Positions 12,395 through 38,728 of a stretch of 64,000 bases of DNA are shown one piece after another. Under the pieces are notes generated by a model. The model was not told the origin of the DNA and ran no database searches. It saw only the letters and a program-made list of their open reading frames with translations. The stretch is taken from the IMG/VR virus record IMGVR_UViG_3300009537_002640, positions 1-64,000 of that record. One strand, 5' to 3'. Numbering within the stretch: the first letter of the stretch is position 1; each line of letters opens with the position of its first letter. A program made the position numbers and the translations under genes.

Positions 12395-12396
12395 AG

Positions 12397-12897: not shown

Positions 12898-15800
12898 TAT
12901 CGTTTCAACCTTGCCCCTTTGTATCTTTCGAATATCTCAGTAGAAGTACGAACAGAATTAGATACTCTTACGGCCCCTATAGAGCCATCAAAATATTCAT
13001 CCGTTGACGGCCAATATATCCCCATATACACATCAGCTGTACTAACATGGTTGCCCGTCATAAGCGAATTTTCTGTTTGTCCCAATTGTCGACCGTCAAG
13101 ATACAACGCTAATCTTTTGTCGGCAAAACTATACGTAAACGCTACATAGTGCCAAGCCCCAGCAGTAATTGTACCTAAAGTCAATTGAACGCTTTCTCCT
13201 ACATTATCCATAACTTCTGCAGCAAGATAGCCGTCTGAGCCAACACCTAGAGAAAAGCCTGCACCACCTACTTCTATGCGATTTAGCAATCTTCCATTAT
13301 GCAATGTATCAGCTTGAAACCAACATTCTACAGATAGGTCTTCGTGATCCCATTCAGAGTTAGCAGGTATAACTACGTAATCAGCTGTACCATCAAAAAT
13401 ACGGGCTTTCTCGCCGCTGGAAGAAACACTCAACAGTGGTTCACTTCTTGGAGAGCCGCCATGAATTTCGTTAAACAAATAGCCGTCGCGCTCATCATTG
13501 TTAAAACCCCTCACCTGCATATTATTCCATTCATAATCAAATGTTCCAGTGGTTGCATATTCGGCACGAAGGACATTTCCTATCTGAATCCAACAATCAT
13601 CTTCGGGTCCGGTTGCCTGCCCTAATAATGTTGTTGGTTCAGCCCCATTTATCCCGTAATATGTTCTCCACTTATTACCTTCTCTAGTAAAACGTGTGCT
13701 TATTGAACTAGGAACTACAGCTCCAAATTCAGTAGTGCTAATCGTACTGTACAGATAAGAATATATCCTATTTCTGTTGTTTGATCCATCAAACCATTCA
13801 TCATATACAATGTAAACTGCTACGCCCGATGCTGTTCGCATTCTAACTTCGGACCTATCGGTGCTGCTAGTTGCCCACGGTTGAGGTCTGCTTGGCAAGC
13901 TAGGCATATCTATTCTGAAATCAAAATTCCCAGTGACTCTTAATCCTCCCCGAGAATCTATGAAGACCTGAGAATAGTCTCCGCCTATGTGGTCATTTCT
14001 CAGAACTATATTGCCCCCGGATACAAAAACATCGTTGGAGCCATTTCCTAATAAAGAATCGCCTACTGCTGGGAAAAAACGACGAAAATCATCTGTATCG
14101 GCATAACTAGCCAAAGCGTTGTACGCTAATGGAATAGAGCGATTACTGGTCATTATTTGTCGTCCAGGATCTTCACTAAAATCCCAAATAACCATTGTGT
14201 GTTCGTCTTCTACAAACCCAATCTTGGGGTCATCTGCTGCATGATAAGTATTGTATATTTCCCATGGGGCCCGCACTACATTAGAGAAACGAATGTCGGC
14301 TATATCACCATCGAAATAAAATGTTGCAGATGAGCCTCGACGACCTACAGCGAATGAATTTGTAGTATTGGCGGTTATGCCTGCCGAAATAGTATCTACC
14401 AATTCGCCATCTAAATACCCAGAGAGGTTAGAACCATCGTGAGTCATAGCAAAATGATACCACCTATTGGTCAAAATCTGAGGGCCAGTGAGTGTAAAGC
14501 CAGAACCGTTAGCAGAATTGTACCTTATGTTCATATTTGCGTCGAGGTCGACCCCCCATCCATTAGAATTGTATGCCTCTTTGGAAACTATGTACTGATA
14601 ATCACCAGTAACGCTATGAGCCCTAAACCACCCCTCAATAGTAAATGGAGAACCAATATCAAATGCCGCATCGTCACTATACATATATCCCTGACTACCA
14701 TCAAATCTTGCGCAATGAGTAAAGGGCACTTCGTTATCATCTGCTAGTGCAAGATTACACCCAAGACGAGCCCGTAGGTCTAATGCAGAATTGCCCTTAA
14801 CATTAGTTCCTATTCGTTCTATGAATGGATTTGCTTCCATCAGTCTGAACGTATCAAACTCTGCAGATATAAAAGATGCACCAGTAAATGCGTTGCCAAG
14901 ATATAACGCAGTGCCACTAGTTGTTGTTGCCCAAGTCTGTTCCGTCAACTGATCATTTATGTATAGCTCAATATAATGACTACTAGTATTGCCAGGATCT
15001 AACTCATAACCCCTAACCTCTATTTCGGTCCAATCTTTGGTAAAATCAATTCCGTTCGGGAGTCCAAAGCTTATGGAGCCCTGATCATTAATAATAGTAA
15101 AAGTGTCAACTCCACCATAAACACGCCATCTAGTTCCATCTATAACACTATAGAGAATAGTGTGATTGCTTGCTGTAGGAGTGAAGGGGTTTACGTCTTC
15201 GTCCCTATGTCTAAATTTAATAGTAAAGCCATTAGAAAATTGAGGTACGTAACTAGAGTCATTGGAGCGCCACATGCGGCTATAACTCGATGTAACATTG
15301 AAATTATAGTAGGTCATAGTACCCTTAAATTCCGGTCTCAATGTTTCGCTACTTGAATCTCCAGTGAAATTACTAGGTGGATCATGAACATCACCACCAA
15401 TTGTACTGAAATCAAAATTAAGCTTTGGTGCAGAGCCAGTTGTTTGAGATTCTGCCCGAATTGTTTTATTCATAGGCCACAATGCTACAGTGTTCGCATC
15501 TACTTGCAATCTGCGACCAGAACGAGTAACTACAGGCTGGAGTGCTTGGGCAGCCTGAACGAGTGTAACAGTCACCTCGGGAGAATCAGGACTAGCCTGA
15601 GAAACAGATACGGCTCTAATTTTTGTCCCGGGCTCTTGATTAGAAAAAGGTATACTCATTGAGAATTGTCCATTCTCAGCCGCTATGGTGTACCCATCGG
15701 CAATCAGCCCCTCATCCGTATGTAATTCTGTATGAACGCCATTTAGTGGGGGTACTCTACCCTTGATGCTTACAACGCTAAAAACCTTATCACCGCTGTT

Positions 15801-18130: not shown

Positions 18131-19429
18131 TCAGAGTAATTCGGCGGCCTTCGTAGCCAACTCAGAGCGTTCTCCCTTCTTCAAACCTACATGAGCCGCG
18201 ATTGGCTCATCTTTGAACTTTTCAATAACATATGAGAGCCCATTATCTACCGCGTCGATAAAAGGATTATCTATCTGGTAGATGTCGCCTGTCAGGACGA
18301 CCTTAGAATCCTCTCCTACACGAGTGATAATAGTCTTTATTTCATGCCTTGTTAAATTCTGGCATTCATCTACTATGATAAAAGTCTTTGGAATAGAGCG
18401 CCCTCTGATATAGGTTAGCGCCTCGACCTGCAATCTACCGCCACGAGACTGTTCTAAGTCTAGATAGTCTGCGCCCTTTTCTGAAAATAGTAGGTCTAAG
18501 TTATCCTGCAAAGGCGCCATCCAGGGCTGCATTTTCTCTTCCTTTGTACCTGGCAGAAATCCCAAGTCTCTGCCCAAAGGCATAATTGGACGGGACATGA
18601 TTATCTTACGATAGGTATGGCTATCGTAGACCTGGCTAACACCAGCAGCTGCAGCCAGAAGTGTCTTACCACAACCAGCTTTACCTGTCAGAGTAACCAA
18701 TCTAATGTCAGGATTAAAGAGAGCATCGAATGCAAACGCCTGCTCTTTGTTACGAGGGTTTATTCCCCACACATTTGCTTTAGGCTCTATCTTGTGCAGC
18801 TGTCCACAAGAAAATCTAGCTAAGCCTGAGTGCTTAGGATTAACTTCTGAGCTTAATAGAACATACTGATTCTCATGGAATTGATGGACGAATCCACCAT
18901 CCATAAAGCCTAAATTATGAAACGTATCAATGTGAGATTCTGGAACCTGAACCTGAACACAACCGCTGTATATAGCTTCAGCTGTTTCTGCCACAGAGTC
19001 AGTATTGTAATCCTCAGCATCTACATTTAGGGCGTCACACTTCACCCGCATATTGATATCTTTGGTGATTAGTGCAACCACGCAGTCAGGGTGCGCTGAT
19101 TGCAATCCTAATGTAACGCTTATGATACGATTATCTGCCCGAGATGGGTCAAGGTGGGAAGGAACATTGTCCTTATGATTGATTTCAACACGAACCGTTC
19201 CACCTGCTGGTGTAGGCACACCTTCATGCAAATTACCCTGCTCACGCATTTCATCGAGTGAACGGATAACCATTCTTGCATGGCGTGCTACCTCATCTGG
19301 TCCGCTTTTCTTCTTGTCTAATTCATCTAAAACTACTAGGGGTATTACTACTTCATTATCATCAAATGCAAATAATGCTCTTGGGTCATGCAATAGGACA
19401 TTCGTGTCCAATACAAATATTTTGCTCAT
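18131..19429 (-). CDS. phoH: PIN domain-PhoH ATPase fusion (PhoH2/YlaK-like)
   Basis: N-terminal PIN (FVLDTNVLLHDP, VVLDELD, ADNRII, TKDINMR). C-terminal PhoH ATPase (GKAGCGKT, LGFLPG, YIRGRS, IIVDECQN, LTGDIYQID, RSELA). Confidence 0.93.
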   Translation of the reverse strand: MSKIFVLDTNVLLHDPRALFAFDDNEVVIPLVVLDELDKKKSGPDEVARHARMVIRSLDEMREQGNLHEGVPTPAGGTVRVEINHKDNVPSHLDPSRADNRIISVTLGLQSAHPDCVVALITKDINMRVKCDALNVDAEDYNTDSVAETAEAIYSGCVQVQVPESHIDTFHNLGFMDGGFVHQFHENQYVLLSSEVNPKHSGLARFSCGQLHKIEPKANVWGINPRNKEQAFAFDALFNPDIRLVTLTGKAGCGKTLLAAAAGVSQVYDSHTYRKIIMSRPIMPLGRDLGFLPGTKEEKMQPWMAPLQDNLDLLFSEKGADYLDLEQSRGGRLQVEALTYIRGRSIPKTFIIVDECQNLTRHEIKTIITRVGEDSKVVLTGDIYQIDNPFIDAVDNGLSYVIEKFKDEPIAAHVGLKKGERSELATKAAELL

Positions 19430-21263: not shown

Positions 21264-23681
21264 CTAACTGCACTTAGACCATCCACAGTCTTGACAAGTT
21301 ACGCAGCCTTCTTGATATATCATCGCCTCTGATTCACAAGAAGGGCATGTTTTATCGGATGTAACTCTTGTCCCATCCTCTATGTATTTCTTTAGAACTC
21401 GCGCCAATACTTTTGAGAAGCTGGTTAAATCACTATCAGGGTCTTTCTGCAGTTGCTCAACCAAGAATGATGGCTTTGCCCCATGTCTCAATGCAAGTGA
21501 TACCATCCTAGTATGTGTTTGGTATAGCACGTTGTCAAATACCTTTGTCACATTACGTATAGCTCCGTCTTCTCCAAAAGATAAATCGTATTTACTTTGT
21601 TTCTTAGTACTGGATGCTTTGGTAAGAACACCATCAGAAAACTTACGCGGTATCTCAACCATTTCAGATAGCCCGCCGAATACCTCATATGGTCTTCCGT
21701 TCATAAGTCCAACCAGAATAGTCCACTTCTCGCCCTTAACAGTTGCTTGGTGAATATGGCAAGGTAAGTCTTTGGGACGCTTTACTGCATCTCTGTAATC
21801 AAACTTATCTTTGCTACTCTCAGTAACCAGCACCCCACTACGAGAACCGTCTACGTAAACAGTAACGCCCTTCAGCCCCTCTTTCCAGCCTGCCATGTAA
21901 AGCTCACCAACAACTTCTGGCGGTGTACCACTGGGAAGATTAATGGTGCTTGAGATAGCGTGGTCTATGTGCCTTTGAATAGTGCCTTGAATCTGTACTC
22001 GACGCAACCAATCTATTTGGTCACTCTCCACAAAGAACTCAGGCAACTCAGCATCAGGCTTCAGCCCCTTAATATCAAGCCACTGTTTTACGTTATGATG
22101 GAAAACCTTAAACTCTTCCCACCTATCGCCCATATCATCCACAAAGTCATCAGGGGAGCCAGCATCGTTATGTGAACGCTTCTTGCGTCGAATATGCGCA
22201 TTCCTAAATACAGGCTCTAATCCAGAGCTAGTTTGAGATACTAGTGATACACTTCCTGTTGGGGCGTTGGTAAGATTAGCTATATTGCGCCTGCCGTTTT
22301 CTTTAACCAACTTAAGTACATCTACTGGTAAGTTCTTAATAAACTCATTATCCTTTTCTTTGTTCCAGTCCCATACAGGAAACGTGCCTCGTTCTCCTGC
22401 TAACCTGGCACTTTCAGAATATGATACCACCTTGAGAGTTTCGTAAATCCTATCTACTACCTCAAGAGCTGCATCCGAATCATACCTTAGTTGCAAACAT
22501 GCTAAAACATCAGCCAGACCATGAGTACCCAATCCGGTTCTACGGCCATCTTGTGCAGCCTTTAGAAGCTTAGTCCACATTGCTTTTTCATCAGGGGTGT
22601 CAGATATATTTAGGATATTCTCTAGCTTCTCAATCTCTAACTCAACCAGGTCATCTGATAATCTTTGTGCCATTGATACTGTATTCTCGAATTCTTCAAA
22701 ATCAAAGAACGCCTCATCTGTGAATTCGCCATGTACAAAGTTCTTTAGGTTGATAGAAATCAACCTACATGAGTCGTAAGCTGATAGAGGAATCTCAGAG
22801 CATGGGTTGGTAGAGATAGTCTTAAAGCCCACATCAGCATAAGCTTCGGCTGGCATATACTTCAAAATGTTATCCCACATTAACAAACCTGGCTCTGCAT
22901 AATTAGTTGCAGACTCCACTATTGTCTTCCAAAGTTCCTTGGCGTGAACCTTACGAGTTATCACTGGGTCATCGGAATCAATAGGGAAGCGCAGAGTGAA
23001 CATCTCGTCCTTTTCTACCGCTTCCATAAACTCATCCACCAGCCTGACTGAAACATTAGCTCCAGTGACTTTGGTAAGGTCGTTCTTCATTGTAACAAAT
23101 TTGAAAATATCGGGGTGCCGTACATCCATACTAATCATAAGAGCACCACGACGACCGTGTTGCCCAATCATACGACATGTATAGGAATACAAATCAGCAA
23201 AAGACCAAGCTCCAGTTGTGGTGCCAGCAGAATTATTCACTAGCGAGCCTTCGGGACGCAAAGTGGATATATCTAACCCGACACCACAACGGCGCTTGAA
23301 TAGATTAGCCAGCTCTTTACTGGCATCAACAATAGAAGATATTGTATCTTTTGGAGATTCCACTACGACACAATTTGACAAGGATACATTGACATAGTTG
23401 TTGCCAATACCCATCATAGGAGAGCCCTGAGGAACAATGTGTTTAAAATGTGCAAGCTGTGCGTAAATCTGTTCTTCAGACAACGCACGGTTTCCCCCAA
23501 ATTTCTTCTCCATCCTGGCAAACTCTTTAGCTAAACGCCGATGCATATCATCTGGCGTCTTCTCCATAAGATTGCCCTCTTTATCTTTAAGAGCATACTT
23601 GCTCATCCAAACATTAGCGGCTAATTGGTCGCCGCCGAAATATTCAAGTGTACTTTCTAATACCTCATTCTTGTCGTGCAT
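21264..23681 (-). CDS. nrdJ: Class II (adenosylcobalamin-dependent) ribonucleotide reductase
   Basis: SLSNC, RRGALM, TNPCSEIPL, APTGS.S, DHAISSTINLP, KGVTVYVDGSR. C-terminal TSCPD-like domain and Zn ribbon (CPSC...EGCVTCQDCGWSKCS). No small subunit is present. Confidence 0.93.
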   Translation of the reverse strand: MHDKNEVLESTLEYFGGDQLAANVWMSKYALKDKEGNLMEKTPDDMHRRLAKEFARMEKKFGGNRALSEEQIYAQLAHFKHIVPQGSPMMGIGNNYVNVSLSNCVVVESPKDTISSIVDASKELANLFKRRCGVGLDISTLRPEGSLVNNSAGTTTGAWSFADLYSYTCRMIGQHGRRGALMISMDVRHPDIFKFVTMKNDLTKVTGANVSVRLVDEFMEAVEKDEMFTLRFPIDSDDPVITRKVHAKELWKTIVESATNYAEPGLLMWDNILKYMPAEAYADVGFKTISTNPCSEIPLSAYDSCRLISINLKNFVHGEFTDEAFFDFEEFENTVSMAQRLSDDLVELEIEKLENILNISDTPDEKAMWTKLLKAAQDGRRTGLGTHGLADVLACLQLRYDSDAALEVVDRIYETLKVVSYSESARLAGERGTFPVWDWNKEKDNEFIKNLPVDVLKLVKENGRRNIANLTNAPTGSVSLVSQTSSGLEPVFRNAHIRRKKRSHNDAGSPDDFVDDMGDRWEEFKVFHHNVKQWLDIKGLKPDAELPEFFVESDQIDWLRRVQIQGTIQRHIDHAISSTINLPSGTPPEVVGELYMAGWKEGLKGVTVYVDGSRSGVLVTESSKDKFDYRDAVKRPKDLPCHIHQATVKGEKWTILVGLMNGRPYEVFGGLSEMVEIPRKFSDGVLTKASSTKKQSKYDLSFGEDGAIRNVTKVFDNVLYQTHTRMVSLALRHGAKPSFLVEQLQKDPDSDLTSFSKVLARVLKKYIEDGTRVTSDKTCPSCESEAMIYQEGCVTCQDCGWSKCS

Positions 23682-23765: not shown

Positions 23766-24416
23766 TTATCCGCTAAGTTCGCCAAGTAGTTGACTCTTGC
23801 GCAACTTAGAGATTGCCTTATTCTTGATTTGTCGGATACGCTCGTGGGTAAGATTGAACATAGGCCCTATCTCACGCAAAGTTTGTGGCTGACGGCCATC
23901 CAAACCGAAGATAAGCCTTACAATCTCACGGTCACGTTCTGGAAGCTCGCCAAGCACTTCTGCTATACGCTCATCACGTTCCTTGACAAAGAATTGCTCT
24001 TCGGGAGTTTCCTCCACCTGCTCTTCTTCCTTGCCAATTTCAGAAGGCTCTGCGTACACAACGCGAGTCTTGTCGGGATTGTACACGACATCGAAACGAC
24101 TTGCTGCACGCTTTACACTATGGCGAATCCATTGCTCCGAAAAGACGAAGAAGTTTGGGAAACGGTTATGGTCAAAGCGACGTACTGCCTTCACAAGACC
24201 AATAAACCCTTCCTGGACCAAATCTTCATAATTAGGGAAACTTCTATATGGTTTAGTTACACTATATACCAAAAAAGAAAGTTCGGTAACTATTCTGTTC
24301 TGGACCTTTTCTACCTGCTTCTCCAATTGATCACTTGACAGAGTGCCATCGGCCTTCAAATCATCAATACTACGAAACAGGTTCATTGCCTCTTCGTTGC
24401 TCATGTAACGACTCAT
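23766..24416 (-). CDS. Compact sigma70-family RNA polymerase sigma factor (regions 2 and 4)
   Basis: Region 2 YEDLVQEGFIGLVKAVRRFD...WIR. RpoD-like region 4 TLREIGPMFNLTHERIRQIKNKAISKLR. 216 aa, region 3 largely absent. Confidence 0.93.
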   Translation of the reverse strand: MSRYMSNEEAMNLFRSIDDLKADGTLSSDQLEKQVEKVQNRIVTELSFLVYSVTKPYRSFPNYEDLVQEGFIGLVKAVRRFDHNRFPNFFVFSEQWIRHSVKRAASRFDVVYNPDKTRVVYAEPSEIGKEEEQVEETPEEQFFVKERDERIAEVLGELPERDREIVRLIFGLDGRQPQTLREIGPMFNLTHERIRQIKNKAISKLRKSQLLGELSG

Positions 24417-24419
24417 AAC

Positions 24420-24977
24420 TTACTCCTCTTCGCTTACATCTTCAACTCTAAATACTTCTTTTAATTTTCCATCTTTCCAAACACGCACTGTGTTGGTCTC
24501 CTCACTAAGAGTTAATACACCAATTACATCGTCGCGTAAAGAAAAACTTGCTGCGGCTTTATGACGTGTGCCACAATCTTCAGGTGTATCTAACATTGGG
24601 TTTGCAACAACTAGATACACCCCCGCCCCTACAATCTGCCCAGACCTATCGACAACAACAGCGCCGTCATGGGGTGGGCGTGAGTACTCTATGACACACT
24701 GCTTTCCTGCCTCTGTGTCTATCATTCTAAGAGCCTCAATCGGATTCTGCTTAGGCTTCATTTGAACCATGCCATCTACTCTAGGTTCTTTTTCAAAATC
24801 TCCTAAGACAACAAGAGCACCCAGCGGATCTTCTATACCAGATGCAACAGCTTTGGCTAAGTCTTTCAGAATTTCAAAGATAGTTCGTTCAAACTTCTCA
24901 TTATTCTTGGCAAAGCTAAATTGCATACTAAAGTCCACATAAGGTGCCTCACTTTGCTTACTCTTTTCTTCTGTCAT
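24420..24977 (-). CDS. Stand-alone diadenylate cyclase (DisA_N/DAC domain, DacZ-like)
   Basis: GALVVLGD, NP, catalytic HDGAVVV, GAGVYL, GTRHKAAA (RHR-like motif), LSEE...VRVWKDG. Confidence 0.85.
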   Translation of the reverse strand: MTEEKSKQSEAPYVDFSMQFSFAKNNEKFERTIFEILKDLAKAVASGIEDPLGALVVLGDFEKEPRVDGMVQMKPKQNPIEALRMIDTEAGKQCVIEYSRPPHDGAVVVDRSGQIVGAGVYLVVANPMLDTPEDCGTRHKAAASFSLRDDVIGVLTLSEETNTVRVWKDGKLKEVFRVEDVSEEE

Positions 24978-24978
24978 T

Positions 24979-25482
24979 TCATTTTCTTTCTGTATCCTCT
25001 TTGGTAACTATTTTCATAGTAAAACCATCTATTACCATACGGTTGTTATCAAAGGAATACTCAATCGTGTCGTATGTGTGTCCTTGTTTTCTTCCATCCC
25101 AAAATACCATGGTGAAATTAGAGTTTTCAACAATGTGCTCATTTACGGTATTATCAAAGAATCCTCTTCCGTCGTCTGTTGTGGGCTTAATAATGCTTAG
25201 TGCATCAGCATATTGGTAAACCCTATTTAAGTCCTCTTTCTGTTCTTCGTACCAGTGCTGTCCCAAAACCTCTGGCAGATAGGGGAGAAATAAATGATAT
25301 TGTTTCTTGGTCTTCAGGCAATGCTTAGCCGCCCAGAGACCGACCCCGATGTTCACAGATATGTTATACACCAACTCATCGCCATATTGAAAGCTCAAAG
25401 TGTCAAGAGTTTCCTGGACACGCTTATCCTCCGCCTGACTAAATACATCAGGCGTATGTCCAACTACACCAACCTTGTACAT
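24979..25482 (-). CDS. SLOG-superfamily protein (YspA/DUF1273-like)
   Basis: VGVVGH start, GVGLWAA, LFLPY, YADA, NEHIVENS..MVFWDG...GHT..TIEY pattern typical of YspA-type SLOG. Confidence 0.65.
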   Translation of the reverse strand: MYKVGVVGHTPDVFSQAEDKRVQETLDTLSFQYGDELVYNISVNIGVGLWAAKHCLKTKKQYHLFLPYLPEVLGQHWYEEQKEDLNRVYQYADALSIIKPTTDDGRGFFDNTVNEHIVENSNFTMVFWDGRKQGHTYDTIEYSFDNNRMVIDGFTMKIVTKEDTERK

Positions 25483-25680: not shown

Positions 25681-27150
25681 CTATAAGATGTCAAATCCCG
25701 CTTCATCAAATACAAATGCTACCGGGTCTGCATCATCACCATAAGTTTTAAGTTCGACTGGTCCTCCCCATAGTTCATATATATATCCCATGGTTTTCTC
25801 AGTATACTTCTCATCTAAAGGGCCAAAGTCGTCTGAATGTTGGAGCATTAATATATCTCCATCTACCTGATTTACTGTCACAAGAGGTGCTCCATAATTA
25901 ATGGTGGGGCGAATTATATTTTCGATAATCTTATCTAACTCTCTATCTTTCAATTCAATAATACCGTACTCTTCGGGCAAATCATCTTCGTCCATACCTG
26001 GTTCTCGTTCATGTCTATATCCATAGTTGAACAAGCCCAGACTTGTAGCTAACTCAGGTGTTAGATAGTTACGTAAGAACGATGCGTCATCTTCTTCAGC
26101 CGCGACCTCTATTACCTTTTGTATGCCAGTGATATCTGATTCACCATCTTTGTACTTCTTATCCCACCTCTCTCGAATATCAGTAAACACTTTGAACCCT
26201 AAATAGTAAGGATTGATTCGGAAAGGGTGTCCTGGACTTACCACTGAAGCGTGGCACTTACAAAACTCTAAATGTTCCTCCTCACTTGTTTCATGATACT
26301 TAAACATTAGCTCCGCATGCCAAAAGGAAGCAAAGCCTTCATTCATAATCTTGGTCATAACAATGGGATAGAAGTAGTACGACTCTTCTCGTATAATACC
26401 AAGTATATCCTTCTCCCATTCTTCTAACGGAGCATAATTAGTAAGAAACCAAAGCAGGTCTCGCTCAGGATGCGGAGGTAGCTTTTCACCTTCCACCCGA
26501 TATCTTATGCTTCTCTTATTATTGTTGATATTTAGTAGATCGTCGAACTCATCCCTATGTACTTTTTCTTCTATTATGTGCTTATCAGGATAGCGTTTTC
26601 TATATACGCCTTTATGCCAATCTATGTGATTATCTAAAGCAAAACCTATATCCATTAGGTGTTCTACTTTCTCTAACCCATATTGCTCTACATAATCATC
26701 AACTCTAGCTGCTCTTTCTGCAGCTCTATAAATCATATTTCGGTCTGAACCCTTAAACATATGATTGTGCTTAAAAAAATGCACATGCCCAAAGACATGT
26801 GCTGCGACCATGATGTTAATTACATCCAAATTTGTATTCAAAAGGAAAGCATAAGATGGGTCATTATTGAATACAATCTCATACACTTTTGATAGCCCCA
26901 TCTCACCATATATCTTTTGGTGGTCATAGGAGCGACCGTATGACCAGTGGCGCGCTCTAACTGGTAAGCCATATGAACAAGCCTCCAGCATGATGTCTCT
27001 ATTAACATATTCAAAGATAGTAGGGAAGAAATCTAATCCCTCTTTACGGGCTAGCTCTTCCATGTCTTTGATTGCTTTAAATACGTATTCTTGGCCCATA
27101 ATAAATATCCTTACACAAGCATTGTGCCTGCCATAGTTACTGTTTTCCAA
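25681..27150 (-). CDS. spoVR: SpoVR/YcgB family protein
   Basis: YGLPVRARHWSYG, YEIVFNNDPSYAFLL, AHVFGHVHFFKHN, TKIMNEGFASFWH, INPYYLG, FLRNYLT, LWGGPVELKT. Confidence 0.95.
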   Translation of the reverse strand: MENSNYGRHNACVRIFIMGQEYVFKAIKDMEELARKEGLDFFPTIFEYVNRDIMLEACSYGLPVRARHWSYGRSYDHQKIYGEMGLSKVYEIVFNNDPSYAFLLNTNLDVINIMVAAHVFGHVHFFKHNHMFKGSDRNMIYRAAERAARVDDYVEQYGLEKVEHLMDIGFALDNHIDWHKGVYRKRYPDKHIIEEKVHRDEFDDLLNINNNKRSIRYRVEGEKLPPHPERDLLWFLTNYAPLEEWEKDILGIIREESYYFYPIVMTKIMNEGFASFWHAELMFKYHETSEEEHLEFCKCHASVVSPGHPFRINPYYLGFKVFTDIRERWDKKYKDGESDITGIQKVIEVAAEEDDASFLRNYLTPELATSLGLFNYGYRHEREPGMDEDDLPEEYGIIELKDRELDKIIENIIRPTINYGAPLVTVNQVDGDILMLQHSDDFGPLDEKYTEKTMGYIYELWGGPVELKTYGDDADPVAFVFDEAGFDIL

Positions 27151-27545
27151 TCGTGATTTAACAACTCTCGTATAGCTGGTTTATCCACTCTCTGATACTC
27201 ATCAATTAGCAGGTGTATATCTCTTGTTCTAATCCCATCAAAGCATCTATCATACATAGAGGTTGCTGCTGTCACACGCATTCTATCCACCCCTGTTCTA
27301 TTAACAAAAGCTTTGACATATTTTTGGGTGGGAACTACCACCATAAAATACTCATTGCGTGAATCAAATATATAAGCAAGTTTGCCCAGCATATTAGTTT
27401 TGCCTGACTGCCGAGGTACAGTACTAACAAAAGCACCATATTCTTGCCACCAAATATCTATCGCGGATGTATACTTTTTGATAGAGGGTAGATAAATATC
27501 ATGATGATATTTCCATCTATACAGCTCTAAATCCATATAGTTCAT
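27111..27545 (-). CDS. Minimal P-loop NTPase (terminase/SF-helicase-like ATPase fold, 144 aa)
   Basis: Walker A VPRQSGKT, FMVVVPT strand, Walker B LLIDE; overlaps both neighbours. Confidence 0.7.
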   Translation of the reverse strand: MNYMDLELYRWKYHHDIYLPSIKKYTSAIDIWWQEYGAFVSTVPRQSGKTNMLGKLAYIFDSRNEYFMVVVPTQKYVKAFVNRTGVDRMRVTAATSMYDRCFDGIRTRDIHLLIDEYQRVDKPAIRELLNHDWKTVTMAGTMLV

Positions 27546-28717
27546 TCTTCCTTACCCTCGATTCCTAAGAACTGTTTCAAACAAGTATAAATGTCTTCTT
27601 TCTGCTCAATAGCTGCTGTAAGAAAACGCGGATGGTCTATACTCTTCTCAAACTCTTGATGAAGGGTAGACCATCTAAACCCACTGCCCCCATAGTTGTA
27701 AAAGCTATCAGTATTAATTTCTCCGTACCCCACCGCACTGCACAGTTCTAGCAACTCTTTTACCAGCTCAACGCACTTCTCATTATCAGATGGCCAGTTG
27801 TCCCCATCACTAAAAGAGAATACGTAATTGTTCCATTGAGCAGGGGGATGATTAGCCTCTATATGCTCTAAGGCCAGCTTGAATGCTGAGCTACACATCG
27901 TTCCACCAGAGTTAGATATCTTGAAGAAGTTCTCTTCAGGAACCACAGCAGCTCTGGTATCGTGAGCAATAAAGATTAACTCTACGAAGTTATACTTGGT
28001 CTTACAAAAGTGCGCCAACCAAAAGAAGAATGATTTAGCTATGTACTTCTTATCGTCATCCATACTGCCTGAGCGGTCCATTAGGAAATACACAGCGGCA
28101 TTGGAGTGATATTCTTTCTCTAAGTCCCATATCTTGTAACGTAAATCTTCTGGGCGGATGTTCTTAATTTCCGCCTTGCCCTTTTTAGCATTACGCTTCA
28201 TGTTCTCGAAGATGGTGCGCTTCTTGTCTACGTTAGACAATGGGCCAACTTCTGCCAAGTCAGTGAACTTAATGTTCTCTGTCTCAATCTCTACTGCACT
28301 ATCCTTAGCCTCAAGCCAGGGCAAGTCAAGGTCTTCTAGCATCATCTGTATGATTTCAGCTAGCTCTACTTCTTCCTCGTAGATTTCATCACCAGCCTGA
28401 TCATCTGCCTGATTGCCAGTGCCTTTACCCTTACGCCCTGTGCCATCATGAGCAATCATATCTCCGGGCTTAGCATCGCCTTCGCCTTGGCCTACACCCT
28501 CTTTATTCTTATCATCAGCGTGCTTAAACCTATACGTATCTAGAAACTTGATAGGAATCTTAACCTTCCTCTTTCCATCAGAGGAGATAATGCTGGCATC
28601 ACTAACCAAATCCTTCAGATTCTCTCGTATGGCCTTTTTAACACGCTGGGAGTGTCGTGCAGAGTCACGCTTGCCGCGTTTACGCATTCCCCAGATATCT
28701 AGTAAGCTATCGCTCAT
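27542..28717 (-). CDS. yhbH: YhbH/YeaH (DUF444) vWA-domain protein
   Basis: RHSQRVKKAIRENL, KVKIPI, GQGEG, LEDLDLPWL, MIDAS motif LMDRSGSM, SGGTMCSSA, FSDGDNW. Confidence 0.93.
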   Translation of the reverse strand: MSDSLLDIWGMRKRGKRDSARHSQRVKKAIRENLKDLVSDASIISSDGKRKVKIPIKFLDTYRFKHADDKNKEGVGQGEGDAKPGDMIAHDGTGRKGKGTGNQADDQAGDEIYEEEVELAEIIQMMLEDLDLPWLEAKDSAVEIETENIKFTDLAEVGPLSNVDKKRTIFENMKRNAKKGKAEIKNIRPEDLRYKIWDLEKEYHSNAAVYFLMDRSGSMDDDKKYIAKSFFFWLAHFCKTKYNFVELIFIAHDTRAAVVPEENFFKISNSGGTMCSSAFKLALEHIEANHPPAQWNNYVFSFSDGDNWPSDNEKCVELVKELLELCSAVGYGEINTDSFYNYGGSGFRWSTLHQEFEKSIDHPRFLTAAIEQKEDIYTCLKQFLGIEGKEE

Positions 28718-28724
28718 TTTAACC

Positions 28725-30719
28725 TCATGTGGTTTTAGACATTAGTGAGTTCACATATCGTAGCAATTGATTTGCTGAATCGACATTATACCCATACTTA
28801 TCAACCAACGTCTCGATAACCTGATTGATTTTCTTCAACGCCTCAGGGTCAGGATTACGTGAGCTAACGGTCAGACGAATGATATCTGCACGCTCGTCGA
28901 ACAGCTGCTTCTCAAGAGCCTCTTTCAATTTAGCATGACTCTGATAGTCAAACTCAACACCATCGCTTCTACGCTGAAGTACCTTACGAAGTGCTTCCTG
29001 CCTAAAACTATCCTTAGTAGCATCACTGATTCCTACCTTCTCTTCGATACTTCTCATTAGCCCATGGTCTGGTTCGTGGTGCTCACCAAACTCATCAACC
29101 AAATCTGTATCATCTAGATAGGCAGCTACGTTATCTACGTAGTTGTTCAACAGGTTGTTGATTTCCTTATCGAAGTTGACAAAGAATGCCTTCTGAACTT
29201 CGGTCTTAGCCATCTTGGTATATTCCTCAATGACAGTCATGATAATCTCATCAAAGCGTTCGAGGTCTTCCTTACCAAACTTGGCACTGCTCTCAAAGTT
29301 TTCCTTAATAGACCTCAGTACATCAATAGGAGTTATGCAACGCAAGTTGTGCTTACTGAAGCAATCTGCAATACAGTTAAAGATGTAACGTGGACTCACT
29401 CCATCCATACCCTCTCTATCTGCCTCTTCCTTAATGTCCTTCAAGTCTTCCTTAGTGAAGCCATCGACATCGCTACTGTTATATAGATGTAGTTTCTTTA
29501 GTAGAGTAAGATTCTGGTCCTTACCTGGCTCTAGACGACTCATAACTGCAAACATAGATGCTACCTTAAGAGTAAGTGGAGCAACATGTACATCACCGAA
29601 ATCGGCTTCAGCAACCAGCTTCTTGTAAATCTTCTCTTCTTCATCTAAGATTAAGTTATACGGAGCCTTCACAACAATGATACGGTCATGCAACGCTTCC
29701 ATCTTAGTGTCCGCCAAGAAACGAGTATATTCGGTTTCATTGGTGTGCGCAAGAATAAACTCATCAGCGTAAATAAGTGGGAAACGCTCAGTTTTAATGG
29801 TCTTTTCTTGTGCTAAGGTTAGTAGTACATGAAGAAACTTAGGGTCAACCTTTAGCATTTCTATCATTTCCATAATGCCACGGTTTGCTACGTTTAATTC
29901 GCCATCAAACTTGTAAGCACGGGGGTCTGATTCAACACCAAACTCGCCTAACTTACTAAAGTCTACAGAGCCTACAAGCTCGGTAATAGATTGGTTCTTA
30001 GTATCGCCTGGTAAGAATGTACCTATGCCGATACGATTGGTTTCTGAAATGAACAGGCGTTTCACTGGCAACTTTAGCCATTCGCCATTATATTTATGGT
30101 CTAGTAGGTGTTGCACTGGCGGGGATAGTCTTGCTAACGGGTCAATCTTAATGCCGTACTTTTCTCGAAACATTGGTCGTAGGTCGACCGGAACAGCATT
30201 AAGTGGATTCTCGTGCATTGGAGAATCTGTAAGGGCATAAATCGCACCTTCTTTAGTGCGAGACCACGCTTCAAGCCCGTGCTTTAGAAGTGTAGCCATT
30301 TGACTCTTACCAGAGCTTGTTGGCCCGTACAGTAGCAAAATACGACGGCCAACTTGAGAGCCACTGGCTGCAGCCTTTAGGTACTTCACTACCTTATGAA
30401 TCATGTTATCAACGCCAAACAACTCCTGGTTAAAAAACTTGTACCTGGGAATCGTTTGTGTTTTGTCTTCCTCATCGTAGTCCACACCTGCACTGAGTAT
30501 CATATCTAATACTCGGGAATGGGCTAACTGAGCAAGTTTAGGGTTTTCTTGAACCAAAGGAATGAATTCTTCCAGGGTACCTTCCCACTCATGAGTATCC
30601 TGTTTCCTGCTAAACTCGGCGATATCTTTAAAGATATCTTGTTTAGTTCCTTGTCCCTCTAATGTCTTTTCATCGGACATAGTATTACCTCCACTGTTAA
30701 GAACCTTGCTTCTTGACAT
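28725..30719 (-). CDS. prkA: PrkA/YeaG family AAA+ protein
   Basis: Walker A LYGPTSSGKS, SPMHENPL, ESDPRAYKFDGELNVANRG, AHTNETEY, EALHDR, EGMDGVSPRY. There is a second in-frame ATG at 30680, also with GGAGG. Confidence 0.95.
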   Translation of the reverse strand: MSRSKVLNSGGNTMSDEKTLEGQGTKQDIFKDIAEFSRKQDTHEWEGTLEEFIPLVQENPKLAQLAHSRVLDMILSAGVDYDEEDKTQTIPRYKFFNQELFGVDNMIHKVVKYLKAAASGSQVGRRILLLYGPTSSGKSQMATLLKHGLEAWSRTKEGAIYALTDSPMHENPLNAVPVDLRPMFREKYGIKIDPLARLSPPVQHLLDHKYNGEWLKLPVKRLFISETNRIGIGTFLPGDTKNQSITELVGSVDFSKLGEFGVESDPRAYKFDGELNVANRGIMEMIEMLKVDPKFLHVLLTLAQEKTIKTERFPLIYADEFILAHTNETEYTRFLADTKMEALHDRIIVVKAPYNLILDEEEKIYKKLVAEADFGDVHVAPLTLKVASMFAVMSRLEPGKDQNLTLLKKLHLYNSSDVDGFTKEDLKDIKEEADREGMDGVSPRYIFNCIADCFSKHNLRCITPIDVLRSIKENFESSAKFGKEDLERFDEIIMTVIEEYTKMAKTEVQKAFFVNFDKEINNLLNNYVDNVAAYLDDTDLVDEFGEHHEPDHGLMRSIEEKVGISDATKDSFRQEALRKVLQRRSDGVEFDYQSHAKLKEALEKQLFDERADIIRLTVSSRNPDPEALKKINQVIETLVDKYGYNVDSANQLLRYVNSLMSKTT

Positions 30720-30743: not shown

Positions 30744-30780
30744 ATATGTATATTATACACCAACTTTTTGGCACTCTTAA
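30744..30780 (-). promoter_or_regulatory. sigma70-type promoter (TTAAGA-17 nt-TATAAT) upstream of prkA, overlapped by palindrome TGTATA-N-TATACA
   Basis: -35 at 30775-30780, -10 at 30752-30757. The 17-mer is identical to 20313-20329. Confidence 0.78.
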
Positions 30781-37294: not shown

Positions 37295-38728
37295 TTAGCG
37301 TCTACGCCTATCTACCACCCTCTTAGAGTTCTTTGTTAGCTTGCCCATCGCAGAGTTCTTTGCGGTAATCTTCTTGTGCAATGCATCTGCTGCGCTAACA
37401 GTCTGAGTCTTTCCAAGGTCGATGTTCATAGTCTCCGCACGAGTACTTTCTTTACCCTCTAGTGCCTTCATATGACGCTCAGCCTCAGCCTTAAGTTCTT
37501 TCACTCGTTCCTCTGGTAGTCCCAATCCACTGAAGAAAGTATAAATCTTCAAACTGTCTTCGTGGCCCGGAACTTCATAAACACCACGGAACACACGAGT
37601 TCCCTCGTTGCATATCTTGCTTACCATAGCAAATCCGTATTCTAGGTTTGCTGCTGGAACTTCCTCAAGCGCCTTCTTGCTACCAGTAACAATAACACCA
37701 GCCGAACGAGTTTGACCTAGATTGAAGTCAGCAGACAACAGCCCGCTTTCTAAACTGGTTAGCATAGCCTCAGCTACTGCCTCGTCCTCTAGGTAATCTT
37801 CAACTTCAATCATACCGTATAGAGCACAGTCACCAGTTCCCACAAAGACTCTCGAAAAGTCCATTGGGTCTAGAGAAGTGTGTTCGGATGGATTAGCTGA
37901 AAGCTTGTTGAACAAGTGAATAGGCTCAACAATAGCAGTGTTTGCTGTCTTCCAGAATTGTGCCATGGACATACCAGGATACATAAGCTCAATCTTAGCA
38001 TTATCCACAACGAACAGTGAGTTGATTACATCACTGCTTGCCATCTTAGCCAACTTAGCTAAAGTTTGAATGGAGTTGTGCTTAGATAAGCTATCCTCAC
38101 TGGACATGGGTAGCACATATAGCACAGACAATGGCTTGCCTAATTGTGACATAAGGCTCACCATAGTTTCGGCAGAACCTGAACCAGTACCACCACCACC
38201 AGAGACGCATAACAAGAGAATCTCAGTATCCTCTAGATGCTCCTCTAGGTGTTTTAGAATTTCATCAGAATATGTCTCTGCTGCAGCTTTACCAGTATCT
38301 AGGTCCTTACCTGCACCGCCGAGAGCATAGTCCAAAAATAACTTTTGAGCCTCTGGAATATGAACATGCTTCAAATCCTGAGTAGCTGTGTTGATAGCAA
38401 CAGTGCTGTAGCCTCGACCATAAAACTCCTCGGCCAACTTAGACCCACACTGTCCAACACCAACAACTCCAAGATTAACGCTCCTATCCTGTTGCTCTAC
38501 TAACATAACGGTCATATCCTCTTCCTCCGTTGGTTGCTCTTGCTCTTTACGCATCTCTTGTTTTTCTTTTAGAACGTCATCAAGCGAAGCCATATTTGGC
38601 CTTCTAGCCTTTAGCTCTGCTTCAAGACGAGCATTTTCTTCTACAATCTCGCCATCTGTTTTGATTCTTTTTGGCTGCCCATCCGAATCAACTACGACAA
38701 CTCGATTTCCTTTTTCCTCTTCCGACAT
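37295..38728 (-). CDS. Tubulin/FtsZ-superfamily GTPase (PhuZ/TubZ/CetZ-like)
   Basis: GVVGVGQCGSKL, AINTATQDL, GAGKD, tubulin signature GGGTGSG, VVDN. Has a ~80 aa acidic N-terminal extension and a basic C-terminal tail. Confidence 0.9.
   Translation of the reverse strand: MSEEEKGNRVVVVDSDGQPKRIKTDGEIVEENARLEAELKARRPNMASLDDVLKEKQEMRKEQEQPTEEEDMTVMLVEQQDRSVNLGVVGVGQCGSKLAEEFYGRGYSTVAINTATQDLKHVHIPEAQKLFLDYALGGAGKDLDTGKAAAETYSDEILKHLEEHLEDTEILLLCVSGGGGTGSGSAETMVSLMSQLGKPLSVLYVLPMSSEDSLSKHNSIQTLAKLAKMASSDVINSLFVVDNAKIELMYPGMSMAQFWKTANTAIVEPIHLFNKLSANPSEHTSLDPMDFSRVFVGTGDCALYGMIEVEDYLEDEAVAEAMLTSLESGLLSADFNLGQTRSAGVIVTGSKKALEEVPAANLEYGFAMVSKICNEGTRVFRGVYEVPGHEDSLKIYTFFSGLGLPEERVKELKAEAERHMKALEGKESTRAETMNIDLGKTQTVSAADALHKKITAKNSAMGKLTKNSKRVVDRRRR

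What the first reader, a model, noticed from the sequence alone, without database searches (positions are those of the whole stretch)
25681..30719. Complete PrkA-YhbH-SpoVR triad carried on a virus-like genome
All three members appear full length with intact motifs (Walker A GPTSSGKS; vWA MIDAS DRSGS; SpoVR HxxGH and NEGFAS). In E. coli ycgB is unlinked from yeaGH, and in B. subtilis the three genes are not one operon, whereas here they are one unit. The biochemical output of the triad is poorly understood, so a phage copy is a handle on function: AAA+/vWA chaperone or protease with SpoVR as a possible metallo-enzyme effector.
Basis: partly seen in the sequence, partly recalled or inferred. 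Interest (0 to 1): 0.68.

Follow-up and report, generated by a model that had tools for sequence, protein, structure and literature searches.

The report
PrkA-YhbH-SpoVR module of a huge phage
A very large tailed phage carries intact copies of the bacterial PrkA/YhbH/SpoVR stress module, which its whole phage clade has kept under strong selection, most likely as an ATP-driven protein-degrading machine used on the infected cell.

Summary
PrkA (28725-30719), YhbH/DUF444 (27542-28717) and SpoVR (25681-27099) lie on the minus strand, full length, with every cited motif intact. The record is a 206-kb myovirus-like phage fragment.

This is not a recent host capture. The nearest cellular homologs are 57% identical or less. 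Phage relatives on contigs up to 468 kb keep the same neighbouring genes. All three gene trees give one phage clade. Non-synonymous change is low (pN about 0.05-0.06) while synonymous sites are saturated. Relatives carry inteins at the ATPase site and beside the SpoVR NEG motif.

The "one unit is unusual" argument fails: 58 of 64 cellular loci have the same order. Phage copies are not new either (Thermus phiYS40, Lalka8, Ralstonia RsoM2USA, LR756511).

New here: the SpoVR N-domain models as a zincin metallopeptidase fold with an HxxxH plus NEG triad but no catalytic Glu. The YhbH N-terminal arm is predicted to bind SpoVR (0.80 against control 0.01).

With the YeaG-dependent starvation proteolysis reported in 2026, I favour a phage-run machine that recycles host proteins. 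That part is inferred, not shown.

The parts
30752..30780 (-). Promoter-like site (TTAAGA-17-TATAAT) in the only sizeable intergenic gap (61 nt) upstream of prkA. It is followed by the SD GGAGGA and ATG 30719.
   Evidence: The number of promoter-like sites in the region is not above chance (24 against 21.9 expected), so only its position makes it a candidate.
28725..30719 (-). PrkA/YeaG-family AAA+ protein, 664 aa. Walker A GPTSSGKS (30303-30326), Walker B/sensor-1 YADEFILAHTNE (29736-29771), conserved GIGTFLPGDTK loop (29997-30029), C-terminal PrkA (kinase-like) domain.
   Evidence: Pfam PF08298 374 bits and PF06798 233 bits. PDB homolog 9xip, E 1.5e-127. Motif coordinates. Invariant residues.
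27542..28717 (-). YhbH/YeaH (DUF444) vWA protein, 391 aa. It has a complete MIDAS (D214-R-S216-G-S218 at 28064-28078, GGT271-273, SDGD303-306) and a conserved Gly-rich N-terminal arm (residues about 57-95).
   Evidence: PF04285 325 bits. TIGR02877 440 bits, cut-off 468. Invariant columns. The arm forms the predicted interface with SpoVR.
27111..27545 (-). Small 144-aa P-loop NTPase inserted between yhbH and spoVR. Walker A PRQSGKT (27396-27416), Walker B LLIDEY (27195-27212). Its start overlaps the yhbH stop (ATGA).
   Evidence: Conserved at the same place in L011, L013, L014, L007 and L006 but absent in L009/L010. Only weak Pfam hits to AAA_30/AAA_19. The Atlas structure resembles the RecD2-type 1A domain (TM 0.68), and the nearest clusters are virus-only. 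It evolves fast: 47% aa identity where PrkA and YhbH are 90-91%.
25681..27099 (-). SpoVR/YcgB-family protein, 472 aa counted from ATG 27099. The N-domain (residues 1 to about 356) has a zincin-like fold, with AHVFGH (26785-26802) and NEGFAS (26326-26343). A C-terminal SpoVR_C domain follows.
   Evidence: PF04293 355 bits and PF24755 29 bits. Start codon. AF2 models with pLDDT 87.6 and 89.5. Structure matches. Invariant H101, H105, N253, E254, G255 and E275.

Best explanation
This is a vertically inherited core module of a clade of very large tailed phages. It has four genes: prkA, yhbH, a small P-loop gene, and spoVR. It was probably acquired once, long ago, as a unit from a bacterial prkA-yhbH-spoVR operon, although the direction of transfer is not rooted. 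It sits in the replication and nucleotide-metabolism block (DnaC-like loader, DnaB, Zn-ribbon, then the module, then diadenylate cyclase, sigma factor, class II RNR). Proposed mechanism: the three proteins form an ATP-driven protein-remodelling or protein-degrading machine. PrkA is the AAA+ motor. YhbH is the adaptor: its N-terminal arm clamps onto SpoVR, which leaves its vWA/MIDAS domain free for PrkA or for substrates. SpoVR is a zincin-fold metallo-enzyme that acts as the effector. During a long huge-phage infection the phage would use it to turn over host cytoplasmic proteins, supplying amino acids and energy, just as its RNR and nucleases mobilise nucleotides. Shown here: gene identity and intactness, phage context, monophyly, purifying selection, operon-like layout, the zincin-like model of SpoVR, and the predicted YhbH-SpoVR interface. 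Inferred: that SpoVR is the peptidase, that PrkA feeds it, and that the targets are host proteins in bulk.
For: Identity and motifs. Phage context. The same synteny (tubulin, UvsW-like helicase, DnaC-like loader, DnaB, Zn-ribbon, PrkA, DUF444, SpoVR, sigma, RNR, PIN-PhoH) holds in independent assemblies, including 468-kb and 461-kb contigs, down to 57% PrkA identity. The phage clade is monophyletic in all three gene trees (SH-aLRT 100, 92 and 96). Its sister is a cellular clade whose loci carry LutB, ABC transporters and FeFe-hydrogenase. Selection, window against L011: PrkA pN 0.063 and pS 0.765; YhbH pN 0.051 and pS 0.792. That is as constrained as DnaB (pN 0.092) and the UvsW-like helicase (0.069). 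Inteins sit after H325 (between Walker B and sensor-1), after K241 (GIGTF loop), and just before SpoVR TKIMNEG. By general knowledge, inteins usually persist at conserved functional sites. For SpoVR, all 50 top VIA rows in two searches are zincin-fold proteins. Nearly all are metallopeptidases: DUF885 3o0y Z 12.1 and 11.6; M1 3cia 10.7 and 11.0; LTA4H; M3; M32; M30; thermolysin. H101, H105, E254 and E275 are invariant. Predicted YhbH-SpoVR complex: ipSAE 0.80, best control 0.01. That mark was reached by 58 of 80 solved complexes and 2 of 110 mismatched pairs. Runs agree on at least 92% of contacts, and partner pLDDT is at least 82. Literature: yeaG, yeaH and ycgB are cofit in six bacteria (10.1101/072470). 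E. coli YeaG/SpdA is required for non-specific starvation-induced proteolysis that supplies amino acids and ATP (PMC13684143). Pure B. anthracis PrkA is a pore-loop AAA+ protein with no protease activity of its own, so any protease must be a partner (PMC13001217).
Against: No experiment on any phage copy exists. SpoVR has Val102, not Glu, after the first His (AHVFGH), so the canonical zincin general base is missing. It could be a non-peptidase hydrolase or a pseudo-enzyme; the pseudo-peptidase TAF2 is among the structural matches. Z scores of 10-12 on a largely helical domain are below the level the tool calls decisive. Foldseek and sequence profiles found nothing. I could not check at residue level that H101, H105 and E254 superpose on a zincin metal site, because no coordinates were available. 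The E. coli paper tests only YeaG and does not mention YeaH or YcgB. The protease activity reported for B. subtilis PrkA (PMC9512850) is disputed (PMC13001217). Host and expression timing are unknown. The complex score comes from my own alignments, so the calibration holds only roughly.
Confidence: 0.45

Rival explanations
1. The module is regulatory rather than degradative. The phage triad reprograms host physiology through a few specific targets, for example by forcing or blocking a starvation, dormancy or sporulation-like state. PrkA would act as a signalling ATPase or pseudokinase, and YhbH and SpoVR as signal-pathway partners.
For: Price et al. interpret the triad as a conserved signalling pathway whose phenotypes differ between species. 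In Bacillus, PrkA affects sporulation gene expression pleiotropically (PMC9512850 and PMC13001217). The module lies next to a phage sigma factor, a diadenylate cyclase and a YpsA-SLOG protein, all regulatory or signalling genes. SpoVR lacks the canonical catalytic Glu.
Against: The sigma factor is generic RpoD-like, not SigF/G-like. The cellular sister clade includes many non-sporulating phyla. The metal-ligand-like residues of SpoVR are invariant, and inteins target its NEG site, which argues for catalysis. YeaG-dependent proteolysis in E. coli is global, not targeted.
Confidence: 0.25
2. The module is a specific chaperone or protease. It would either serve the phage's own needs, such as assembly or maturation of giant virion or replication-compartment proteins, or destroy host defence proteins. 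In that case it is a MoxR/vWA-like maturation system or a counter-defence device.
For: AAA+ and vWA-MIDAS pairs are classically metal-insertion or assembly chaperones (general knowledge of the MoxR-vWA, CbbQ-CbbO and NorQ-NorD systems). The genome encodes several giant proteins of 1680-3811 aa and a tubulin that might need remodelling. At least four to five unrelated phage lineages acquired the triad independently.
Against: No PADLOC defence family matches the triad beyond a marginal P-loop hit. The module is not in the structural gene block, which lies about 150 kb away. The cellular orthologs work in cells without phage proteins. By literature, PrkA belongs to the pore-loop 'classic' AAA+ clade rather than MoxR.
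Confidence: 0.15
3. The block is a passenger or an artefact: a recent host-derived auxiliary gene block in decay, or a chimeric assembly or mis-binned cellular fragment.
For: IMG/VR classes the record as a linear fragment with 25% estimated completeness. Several relatives are filed in MAGs under cellular names.
Against: The same block, in the same phage synteny, occurs in at least six independent assemblies. The best cellular identity is 57% or less. pN/pS is about 0.06-0.08 with saturated synonymous sites. There are no stops or frameshifts. GC is uniform across the window. The MAG contigs with phage synteny are mis-binned phage: L015 'Pacearchaeota' carries the phage DnaC-like loader and DnaB, and P0040 'Patescibacteria' is identical to the PrkA of IMG/VR contig L006.
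Confidence: 0.02

Closest known systems
Bacterial prkA-yhbH-spoVR (yeaG-yeaH-ycgB) operon. YeaG was recently renamed SpdA for starvation-induced protein degradation in E. coli.
   Same: The same three Pfam families occur in the same order and orientation. Walker A/B, MIDAS and the SpoVR H/NEG motifs are all conserved. The closest cellular relatives come from Bacillota (Halothermothrix, Limnochordia, Clostridia), Chloroflexota, Nitrospinota and Entotheonella, at 45-57% identity.
   Different: It is encoded by a phage, inside a replication and nucleotide-metabolism block. A fourth, virus-specific P-loop gene is inserted between yhbH and spoVR. None of the three reaches the NCBIfam equivalog cut-offs. 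It lies downstream of a sigma-70-like promoter candidate and near a phage-encoded sigma factor, so it is probably not under RpoS or sigma-E control as in E. coli or Bacillus. Relatives carry inteins.
Triads of cultured and GenBank phages: Thermus phages phiYS40/TMA (YS40_056/057/059) and Lalka8 (gp12-14), Ralstonia jumbo phage RsoM2USA (ORF30/29/28), and uncultured huge phage LR756511.
   Same: All are phage-borne and carry all three families within a few kb. RsoM2USA has the same gene order.
   Different: Identity is only 24-37%. They sit on separate long branches away from this clade, so they were acquired independently. The Thermus phages have the order DUF444-SpoVR-(x)-PrkA, next to packaging genes. 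None has the small P-loop gene. The papers read give annotation only, with no functional treatment of the phage copies (PMC8504454; none in PMC7824862 or PMC7162821).
ATP-dependent zinc proteases and gluzincins (FtsH/YME1; the M1, M3, M32 and thermolysin families; DUF885).
   Same: The SpoVR N-domain model matches only zincin catalytic domains (Z 8-12, 165-190 aligned residues). It has an H-x3-H motif on a long helix and an invariant NEG(F/W)A Glu on a later helix, which recalls the HExxH...NEGFA arrangement of M1 peptidases (the M1 motif is from my own knowledge). The pairing with a pore-loop AAA+ protein mirrors the logic of FtsH.
   Different: Motor and putative peptidase are separate polypeptides bridged by a vWA protein. 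The catalytic Glu of HExxH is replaced by a near-invariant Val. About 150 residues separate the His pair from the Glu. No sequence-level similarity is detectable. Peptidase activity is untested.

Membership tests
PrkA/YeaG family (Pfam PF08298 + PF06798) | N-terminal AAA_PrkA domain with Walker A and Walker B, plus the C-terminal PrkA domain, over full length | tested here: met
   374 and 233 bits against a cut-off of 25, covering residues 48-655. GPTSSGKS and YADEF are present and invariant in the clade. PDB 9xip aligns over residues 44-662.
PrkA/YeaG equivalog (NCBIfam NF011999) | Score above the curated equivalog cut-off (576 bits) | tested here: not met
   302.5 bits. It is a divergent family member, not an ortholog-grade match to enterobacterial YeaG.
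YhbH/YeaH (DUF444, PF04285; TIGR02877 spore_yhbH) | DUF444 profile over full length with a vWA MIDAS (DxSxS...T...D) | tested here: met
   PF04285 325 bits. D214, S216, S218, T273 and D304 are invariant in 29 sequences. TIGR02877 scores 439.9, just under its 467.95 cut-off, so it is the short Firmicute-type form but not an equivalog.
SpoVR/YcgB (PF04293 + PF24755) | SpoVR domain plus the SpoVR_C domain | tested here: met
   354.7 bits (cut-off 27) and 29.1 bits (cut-off 27.6). The ESM Atlas nearest structure cluster is SpoVR, TM 0.85. The NF008737 equivalog cut-off is not met (204 against 679).
Conserved prkA-yhbH-spoVR three-gene operon | The three genes adjacent, on the same strand, in that order | tested here: met
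   The order is kept, with gaps of 7 nt and 11 nt and an ATGA overlap. One extra 144-aa gene is interposed. The cellular norm is 58 of 64 loci.
Zincin (clan MA) metallopeptidases, for the SpoVR N-domain | Thermolysin-like catalytic fold: a beta-sheet, an active-site helix and a Glu-bearing helix | tested here: inconclusive
   All 50 best VIA rows are zincin-fold proteins in both searches, Z up to 12.1 and 11.6. However, Z is below 13 on a helical domain, Foldseek finds nothing at E<=0.001, and no residue-level superposition was available.
Zincin (clan MA) metallopeptidases, for the SpoVR N-domain | HExxH motif with the catalytic Glu | tested here: not met
   The motif is A-H101-V-F-G-H105. Position 102 is Val in 90% or more of the sequences. 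So SpoVR is not filed as a canonical zincin peptidase, only as zincin-like.
Zincin (clan MA) metallopeptidases, for the SpoVR N-domain | Zinc-dependent peptidase activity | not testable with these tools
   This needs biochemistry.
MoxR-type AAA+/vWA chaperone pairs | A MoxR-clade AAA+ ATPase partnered with a vWA-MIDAS protein | not tested
   A vWA partner with a MIDAS is present. The PrkA clade was not assigned here. The literature places PrkA in the pore-loop 'classic' clade III (PMC13001217), which argues against MoxR membership.
Phage-encoded host-derived (auxiliary) gene module | Flanked on both sides by phage genes on a contig with virion hallmark genes, and conserved among related phages | tested here: met
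   DnaB and the DnaC-like loader lie upstream; sigma, RNR and PIN-PhoH lie downstream. Major head and tail sheath genes are on the same contig. Synteny holds in six other assemblies.

The most novel reading that the evidence does not exclude
Huge phages carry their own version of the bacterial starvation-induced bulk proteolysis system. They switch it on during infection to convert the host proteome into amino acids and energy for making virions. In this system SpoVR is the long-missing zinc-dependent peptidase subunit, YhbH tethers it by an N-terminal arm, and the PrkA AAA+ motor feeds it. This would explain why purified PrkA alone is proteolytically inactive. It would also define a new three-component class of ATP-dependent protease shared by bacteria, archaea and phages.
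Probability: 0.3. Interest if true: 0.85.

Novelty: new member of a known kind. Interest (0 to 1): 0.6.

Why it matters
The PrkA/YeaG-YeaH-YcgB triad is among the most widespread bacterial gene sets that still lack a known mechanism. In 2026 YeaG was tied to global starvation proteolysis, but no protease was identified.

A phage clade has kept all three genes for a very long time, as tightly constrained as its replicative helicase. That shows the three act as one self-sufficient unit that works without host-specific regulators.

This gives compact, independent material for reconstitution, and culturable carriers (Thermus and Ralstonia phages) for genetics. The zincin-like model of SpoVR and the predicted YhbH-SpoVR clamp turn 'unknown function' into specific mutational and biochemical tests.

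For phage biology, it suggests that large phages may mobilise host protein as well as host DNA.

Tried and rejected
- Megablast of the block against GenBank phages found no match.
- Foldseek of the SpoVR model against the PDB found nothing at E<=0.001. The weak rows were mixed, with several zincins among them.
- A profile search of the SpoVR alignment against PDB sequences gave only chance-level hits.
- phmmer of the 45-residue NEGFAS segment against the PDB found no M1 peptidase, only a chance glycosidase. The NEGFA/M1 resemblance therefore rests on the fold match and on my own knowledge of the M1 motif, not on a sequence test.
- Terminase_6N was not found in the 206-kb record. The record is a fragment, so this says nothing.
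- No tRNAs were found.
I therefore have no environment or expression data, and read laying was not used.
- PADLOC gave no defence-family match for the triad, so I dropped the defence-system reading.
- NCBIfam shows the neighbouring sigma factor is generic RpoD-like, not a sporulation sigma. I did not adopt a sporulation-hijack reading or a Firmicute host call.
- The NG86 dS estimate failed because synonymous sites are saturated. I report raw pN and pS instead.
- Only YhbH with SpoVR was sent to complex prediction.
- The large representative search (search of protein representatives) was not used, because the word search and the family scans had already settled identity.


Full report
**1. What is in the sequence**

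The finding's interval holds four tightly packed minus-strand ORFs, not three.
- PrkA: 28725-30719, 664 aa.
- YhbH: 27542-28717, 391 aa.
- A 144-aa ORF: 27111-27545.
- SpoVR: listed as 25681-27150.

Pfam assigns them without ambiguity.
- PrkA: AAA_PrkA 374 bits and PrkA C-domain 233 bits.
- YhbH: DUF444 325 bits.
- SpoVR: 355 bits, plus SpoVR_C 29 bits.

NCBIfam agrees on the families, but none of the three reaches an equivalog cut-off. YhbH comes closest, to the Firmicute-type TIGR02877 (440 against 468 bits).

None of the three has an internal stop.
- GPTSSGKS at 30303-30326.
- DRSGS at 28064-28078, with GGT and SDGD completing the MIDAS.
- HVFGH at 26785-26799.
- NEGFAS at 26326-26343.

Two corrections are needed.
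- The TTG at 27150 overlaps the 144-aa gene. The likely SpoVR start is ATG 27099, behind TAAGGA. That gives 472 aa, matching relatives of 472-476 aa.
- The 144-aa ORF is a real gene. It has a Walker A (PRQSGKT) and a Walker B (LLIDEY). It occupies the same position in the nearest relatives.

The gene spacings are 7 nt, an ATGA overlap, and 11 nt. The only real gap is 61 nt upstream of prkA. It holds a TTAAGA-17-TATAAT site and a GGAGGA Shine-Dalgarno sequence. No terminator-like site lies between the genes. The layout therefore looks like one transcription unit. The promoter call is only a consensus match.

**2. Is it a virus?**

Yes. The window is the first 64 kb of a 206,495-bp IMG/VR record.
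- All 85 ORFs of 250 aa or more lie on one strand.
- Outside the window there is a major head protein (phrog_2522, 265 bits) and a tail sheath.
- Around the module are a PhuZ-like tubulin, a UvsW-like helicase, a DnaC-like loader, DnaB, a class II RNR, a sigma factor, a diadenylate cyclase, a PIN-PhoH fusion, an HNH endonuclease, and giant ORFs of 1680 and 3634 aa.

**3. Relatives and evolutionary history**

The word search found more than 100 clusters of PrkA at 55-90% identity in metagenomes, on contigs up to 468 kb. I fetched six independent contexts.

At 90%, 79%, 78%, 74% and even 57% PrkA identity the neighbourhood is the same: tubulin, UvsW-like helicase, DnaC-like loader, DnaB, Zn-ribbon, PrkA, DUF444, SpoVR, (DAC), sigma, RNR, PIN-PhoH.

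A scan of one genome per prokaryotic species gave 80 loci. The best cellular matches are 45-57% identical.

Trees of PrkA, YhbH and SpoVR each recover the phage sequences as one group (SH-aLRT 100, 92 and 96). The sister group is the same set of bacterial sequences each time: Halothermothrix, Limnochordia, Clostridia, Chloroflexota, Nitrospinota, Entotheonella and some CPR bins.

Three of those sister loci were checked and are plainly cellular. They carry LutB, ABC transporters, RNase D, FeFe-hydrogenase and NuoF.

The triad therefore entered this phage lineage once, as a unit, and long ago. The reverse direction (phage to cell) cannot be excluded, because the root is not inferred.

The trees are 'quick' IQ-TREE LG+G4 runs. 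Rows outside the expected length range, and duplicate loci, were left out.

**4. Selection**

Between the window and its closest relative (L011), PrkA has pN 0.063 against pS 0.765, and YhbH has pN 0.051 against pS 0.792.

Synonymous sites are saturated, so dN/dS is far below 1. Constraint equals or exceeds that on DnaB (pN 0.092) and the UvsW-like helicase (0.069). SpoVR is 85% identical to L013, again with saturated dS.

The small P-loop gene evolves much faster: 47% identity, pN 0.34.

Some relatives carry inteins.
- In PrkA after H325, between Walker B and sensor-1.
- In PrkA after K241, in the invariant GIGTF...K loop.
- In SpoVR right before the invariant TKIMNEG.

Inteins typically persist in conserved active sites (general knowledge). 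This marks these motifs as functionally critical in the phage copies.

The hypothesis of recent capture and decay is rejected.

**5. Is 'one unit' special, and is a phage copy new?**

Neither. [quoted passage not shown] In my sample, 58 of 64 cellular loci with enough flank have PrkA>YhbH>SpoVR adjacent on one strand.

tblastn finds PrkA in 17 GenBank phage records. I confirmed all three families in four of them.
- Thermus phage phiYS40.
- Thermus phage Lalka8.
- Ralstonia jumbo phage RsoM2USA.
- The 595-kb uncultured phage LR756511.

These lie on separate long branches, so they are independent acquisitions.

The literature I could read only annotates these genes (PMC8504454). A jumbo-phage review, the phage G paper and the huge-phage survey do not mention them.

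**6. Mechanism: what the literature gives**

- B. subtilis PrkA was reported as a slow ATP-dependent protease.
- Carefully purified B. anthracis PrkA has no protease activity. It is a pore-loop (clade III, YME1-like) AAA+ protein.
- E. coli YeaG, now renamed SpdA, is required for non-specific starvation-induced degradation of cytoplasmic proteins, which supplies amino acids and ATP.
- A PrkA homolog has solved structures (9xip, 9xiq, 9xir). YhbH and SpoVR have none.

**7. Mechanism: what I add**

SpoVR fold:
- An AlphaFold2 model of the phage SpoVR is confident (pLDDT 87.6 for the whole protein; 89.5 for the N-domain).
- Foldseek finds nothing significant.
- Exhaustive structural alignment to 48,161 PDB representatives returns zincin-fold proteins in all 50 top rows, both for the whole protein and for the N-domain alone.
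- Nearly all of those rows are metallopeptidases. They include DUF885 (Z 12.1 and 11.6), M1 aminopeptidases and LTA4H (10-11), M3, M32, M30, thermolysin, LasB, ACE and DPP III, with 165-190 residues aligned.
- Across 29-30 SpoVR sequences from phages and many phyla, H101, H105, N253, E254, G255, A257 and E275 are invariant.
- H101-x3-H105 lies on a long helix that follows a beta-sheet. E254 opens a later helix. This is the gluzincin arrangement, and NEG(F/W)A recalls the third-ligand motif of M1 peptidases (the M1 motif is from my own knowledge).
- The canonical catalytic Glu is missing: position 102 is a near-invariant Val.
- I therefore call SpoVR zincin-like, not a proven peptidase.

YhbH-SpoVR complex:
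- The prediction scored 0.80 (0.80, 0.81, 0.80) against a best control of 0.01.
- That mark was reached by 58 of 80 solved complexes and 2 of 110 mismatched pairs.
- The runs agree on at least 92% of contacts, and partner pLDDT is at least 82.
- I supplied my own alignments, so the calibration holds only roughly.
- The interface uses the YhbH N-terminal arm (residues 4-25 and 57-95, the conserved Gly-rich segment).
- That arm lies against SpoVR's beta-sheet, the region just before the active-site helix, and the C-terminal domain.
- The vWA/MIDAS domain stays out of the interface.

**8. Synthesis**

Best reading: PrkA is the AAA+ motor, YhbH is a bridging adaptor, and SpoVR is the metallo-enzyme effector. 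Together they form one machine. The phage deploys it from its replication and nucleotide-metabolism block, plausibly to recycle host protein during a long infection.

My confidence differs between the two layers.
- About 0.9 that this is a conserved, selected, functional module of a huge-phage clade.
- About 0.4-0.45 for the degradative mechanism and the host-proteome target.

Rivals:
- A regulatory or signalling role, supported by the neighbouring sigma factor, diadenylate cyclase and SLOG genes.
- A specific chaperone or counter-defence role. PADLOC gives no support for defence.

The host is unresolved. The sigma factor is generic, and the MAG labels of related contigs are inconsistent. At least two are mis-binned phage.

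**9. Limits**

- No model coordinates, so no residue-level superposition.
- Only one pair was tested for binding.
- The tree root, and so the direction of transfer, is not established.

Noticed in passing
window 27111-27545 (-): A virus-specific 144-aa stand-alone P-loop domain sits between yhbH and spoVR. It has a RecD2-like 1A fold (TM 0.68) and its nearest Atlas clusters are 81-94% viral. It is present in the 70-90% subclade and absent in the 57% subclade, and it evolves about 7 times faster (pN) than its neighbours. Its role in the module is unknown.
   Followed up: partly
relatives: proteins P0022, P0042, P0049, P0056, P0062 (PrkA site after H325); P0058, P0059, P0122 (after K241); L014:12494-15307 (SpoVR): Inteins with LAGLIDADG endonuclease domains are inserted at three distinct conserved sites of PrkA and SpoVR in related phages. 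The window's own copies are intein-free. The SpoVR intein sits one residue before the invariant TKIMNEG motif.
   Followed up: partly
window 24420-25482 (-): A phage-encoded diadenylate cyclase (DAC domain, 66 bits) lies next to a YpsA-type SLOG protein, directly downstream of the triad and upstream of a sigma factor. The DAC gene is kept in L007 and L013 but missing in L009 and L014. This may be a c-di-AMP signalling module of the phage.
   Followed up: no
window 23766-24416 (-): A phage sigma-70 family factor (regions 2 and 4). Its best named matches are the MzaA anti-phage-system sigma and RpoD C-terminal models, not sporulation sigmas.
   Followed up: partly
window 1490-17939 (-); G000:C1 97952-159731: A run of giant ORFs: 3634 aa and 1680 aa (the latter with Laminin_G_3 domains) in the window, and 3811, 2185, 2180, 1702 and 1581 aa further along the contig. 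All have essentially no family matches.
   Followed up: no
G000:C1 1-206495: All 85 ORFs of 250 aa or more are on the minus strand across 206 kb. GC skew is uniformly negative and there are no tRNA genes. This is an unusually strict one-strand organisation for so long a stretch.
   Followed up: partly
window 37295-38728 (-): A tubulin/PhuZ-like protein (FtsZ model 73 bits; phrog PhuZ 36 bits) conserved at the same position in all relatives. I did not search for a phage-nucleus shell protein.
   Followed up: no
L015 (NZCX01000035.1, 'Pacearchaeota archaeon' MAG); P0040 (MFA5023370.1, 'Patescibacteria group bacterium' MAG, 246,754-bp contig): Public MAG contigs filed under cellular names belong to this phage clade. 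L015 carries the phage DnaC-like loader and DnaB upstream of the triad. The PrkA P0040 is identical to the one on IMG/VR contig L006. Both are probably mis-binned phage DNA.
   Followed up: partly
window 18131-19429 (-) and 21264-23681 (-): A PIN-PhoH fusion protein and a class II (B12-dependent, NrdJ) ribonucleotide reductase with a C-terminal TSCPD domain. Both are syntenic in relatives.
   Followed up: no
L002 (phiYS40) 4061-5911: In Thermus phage phiYS40 a 616-aa protein with no Pfam match (YS40_058) sits between SpoVR and PrkA. It is another lineage-specific insertion inside a phage triad.
   Followed up: no
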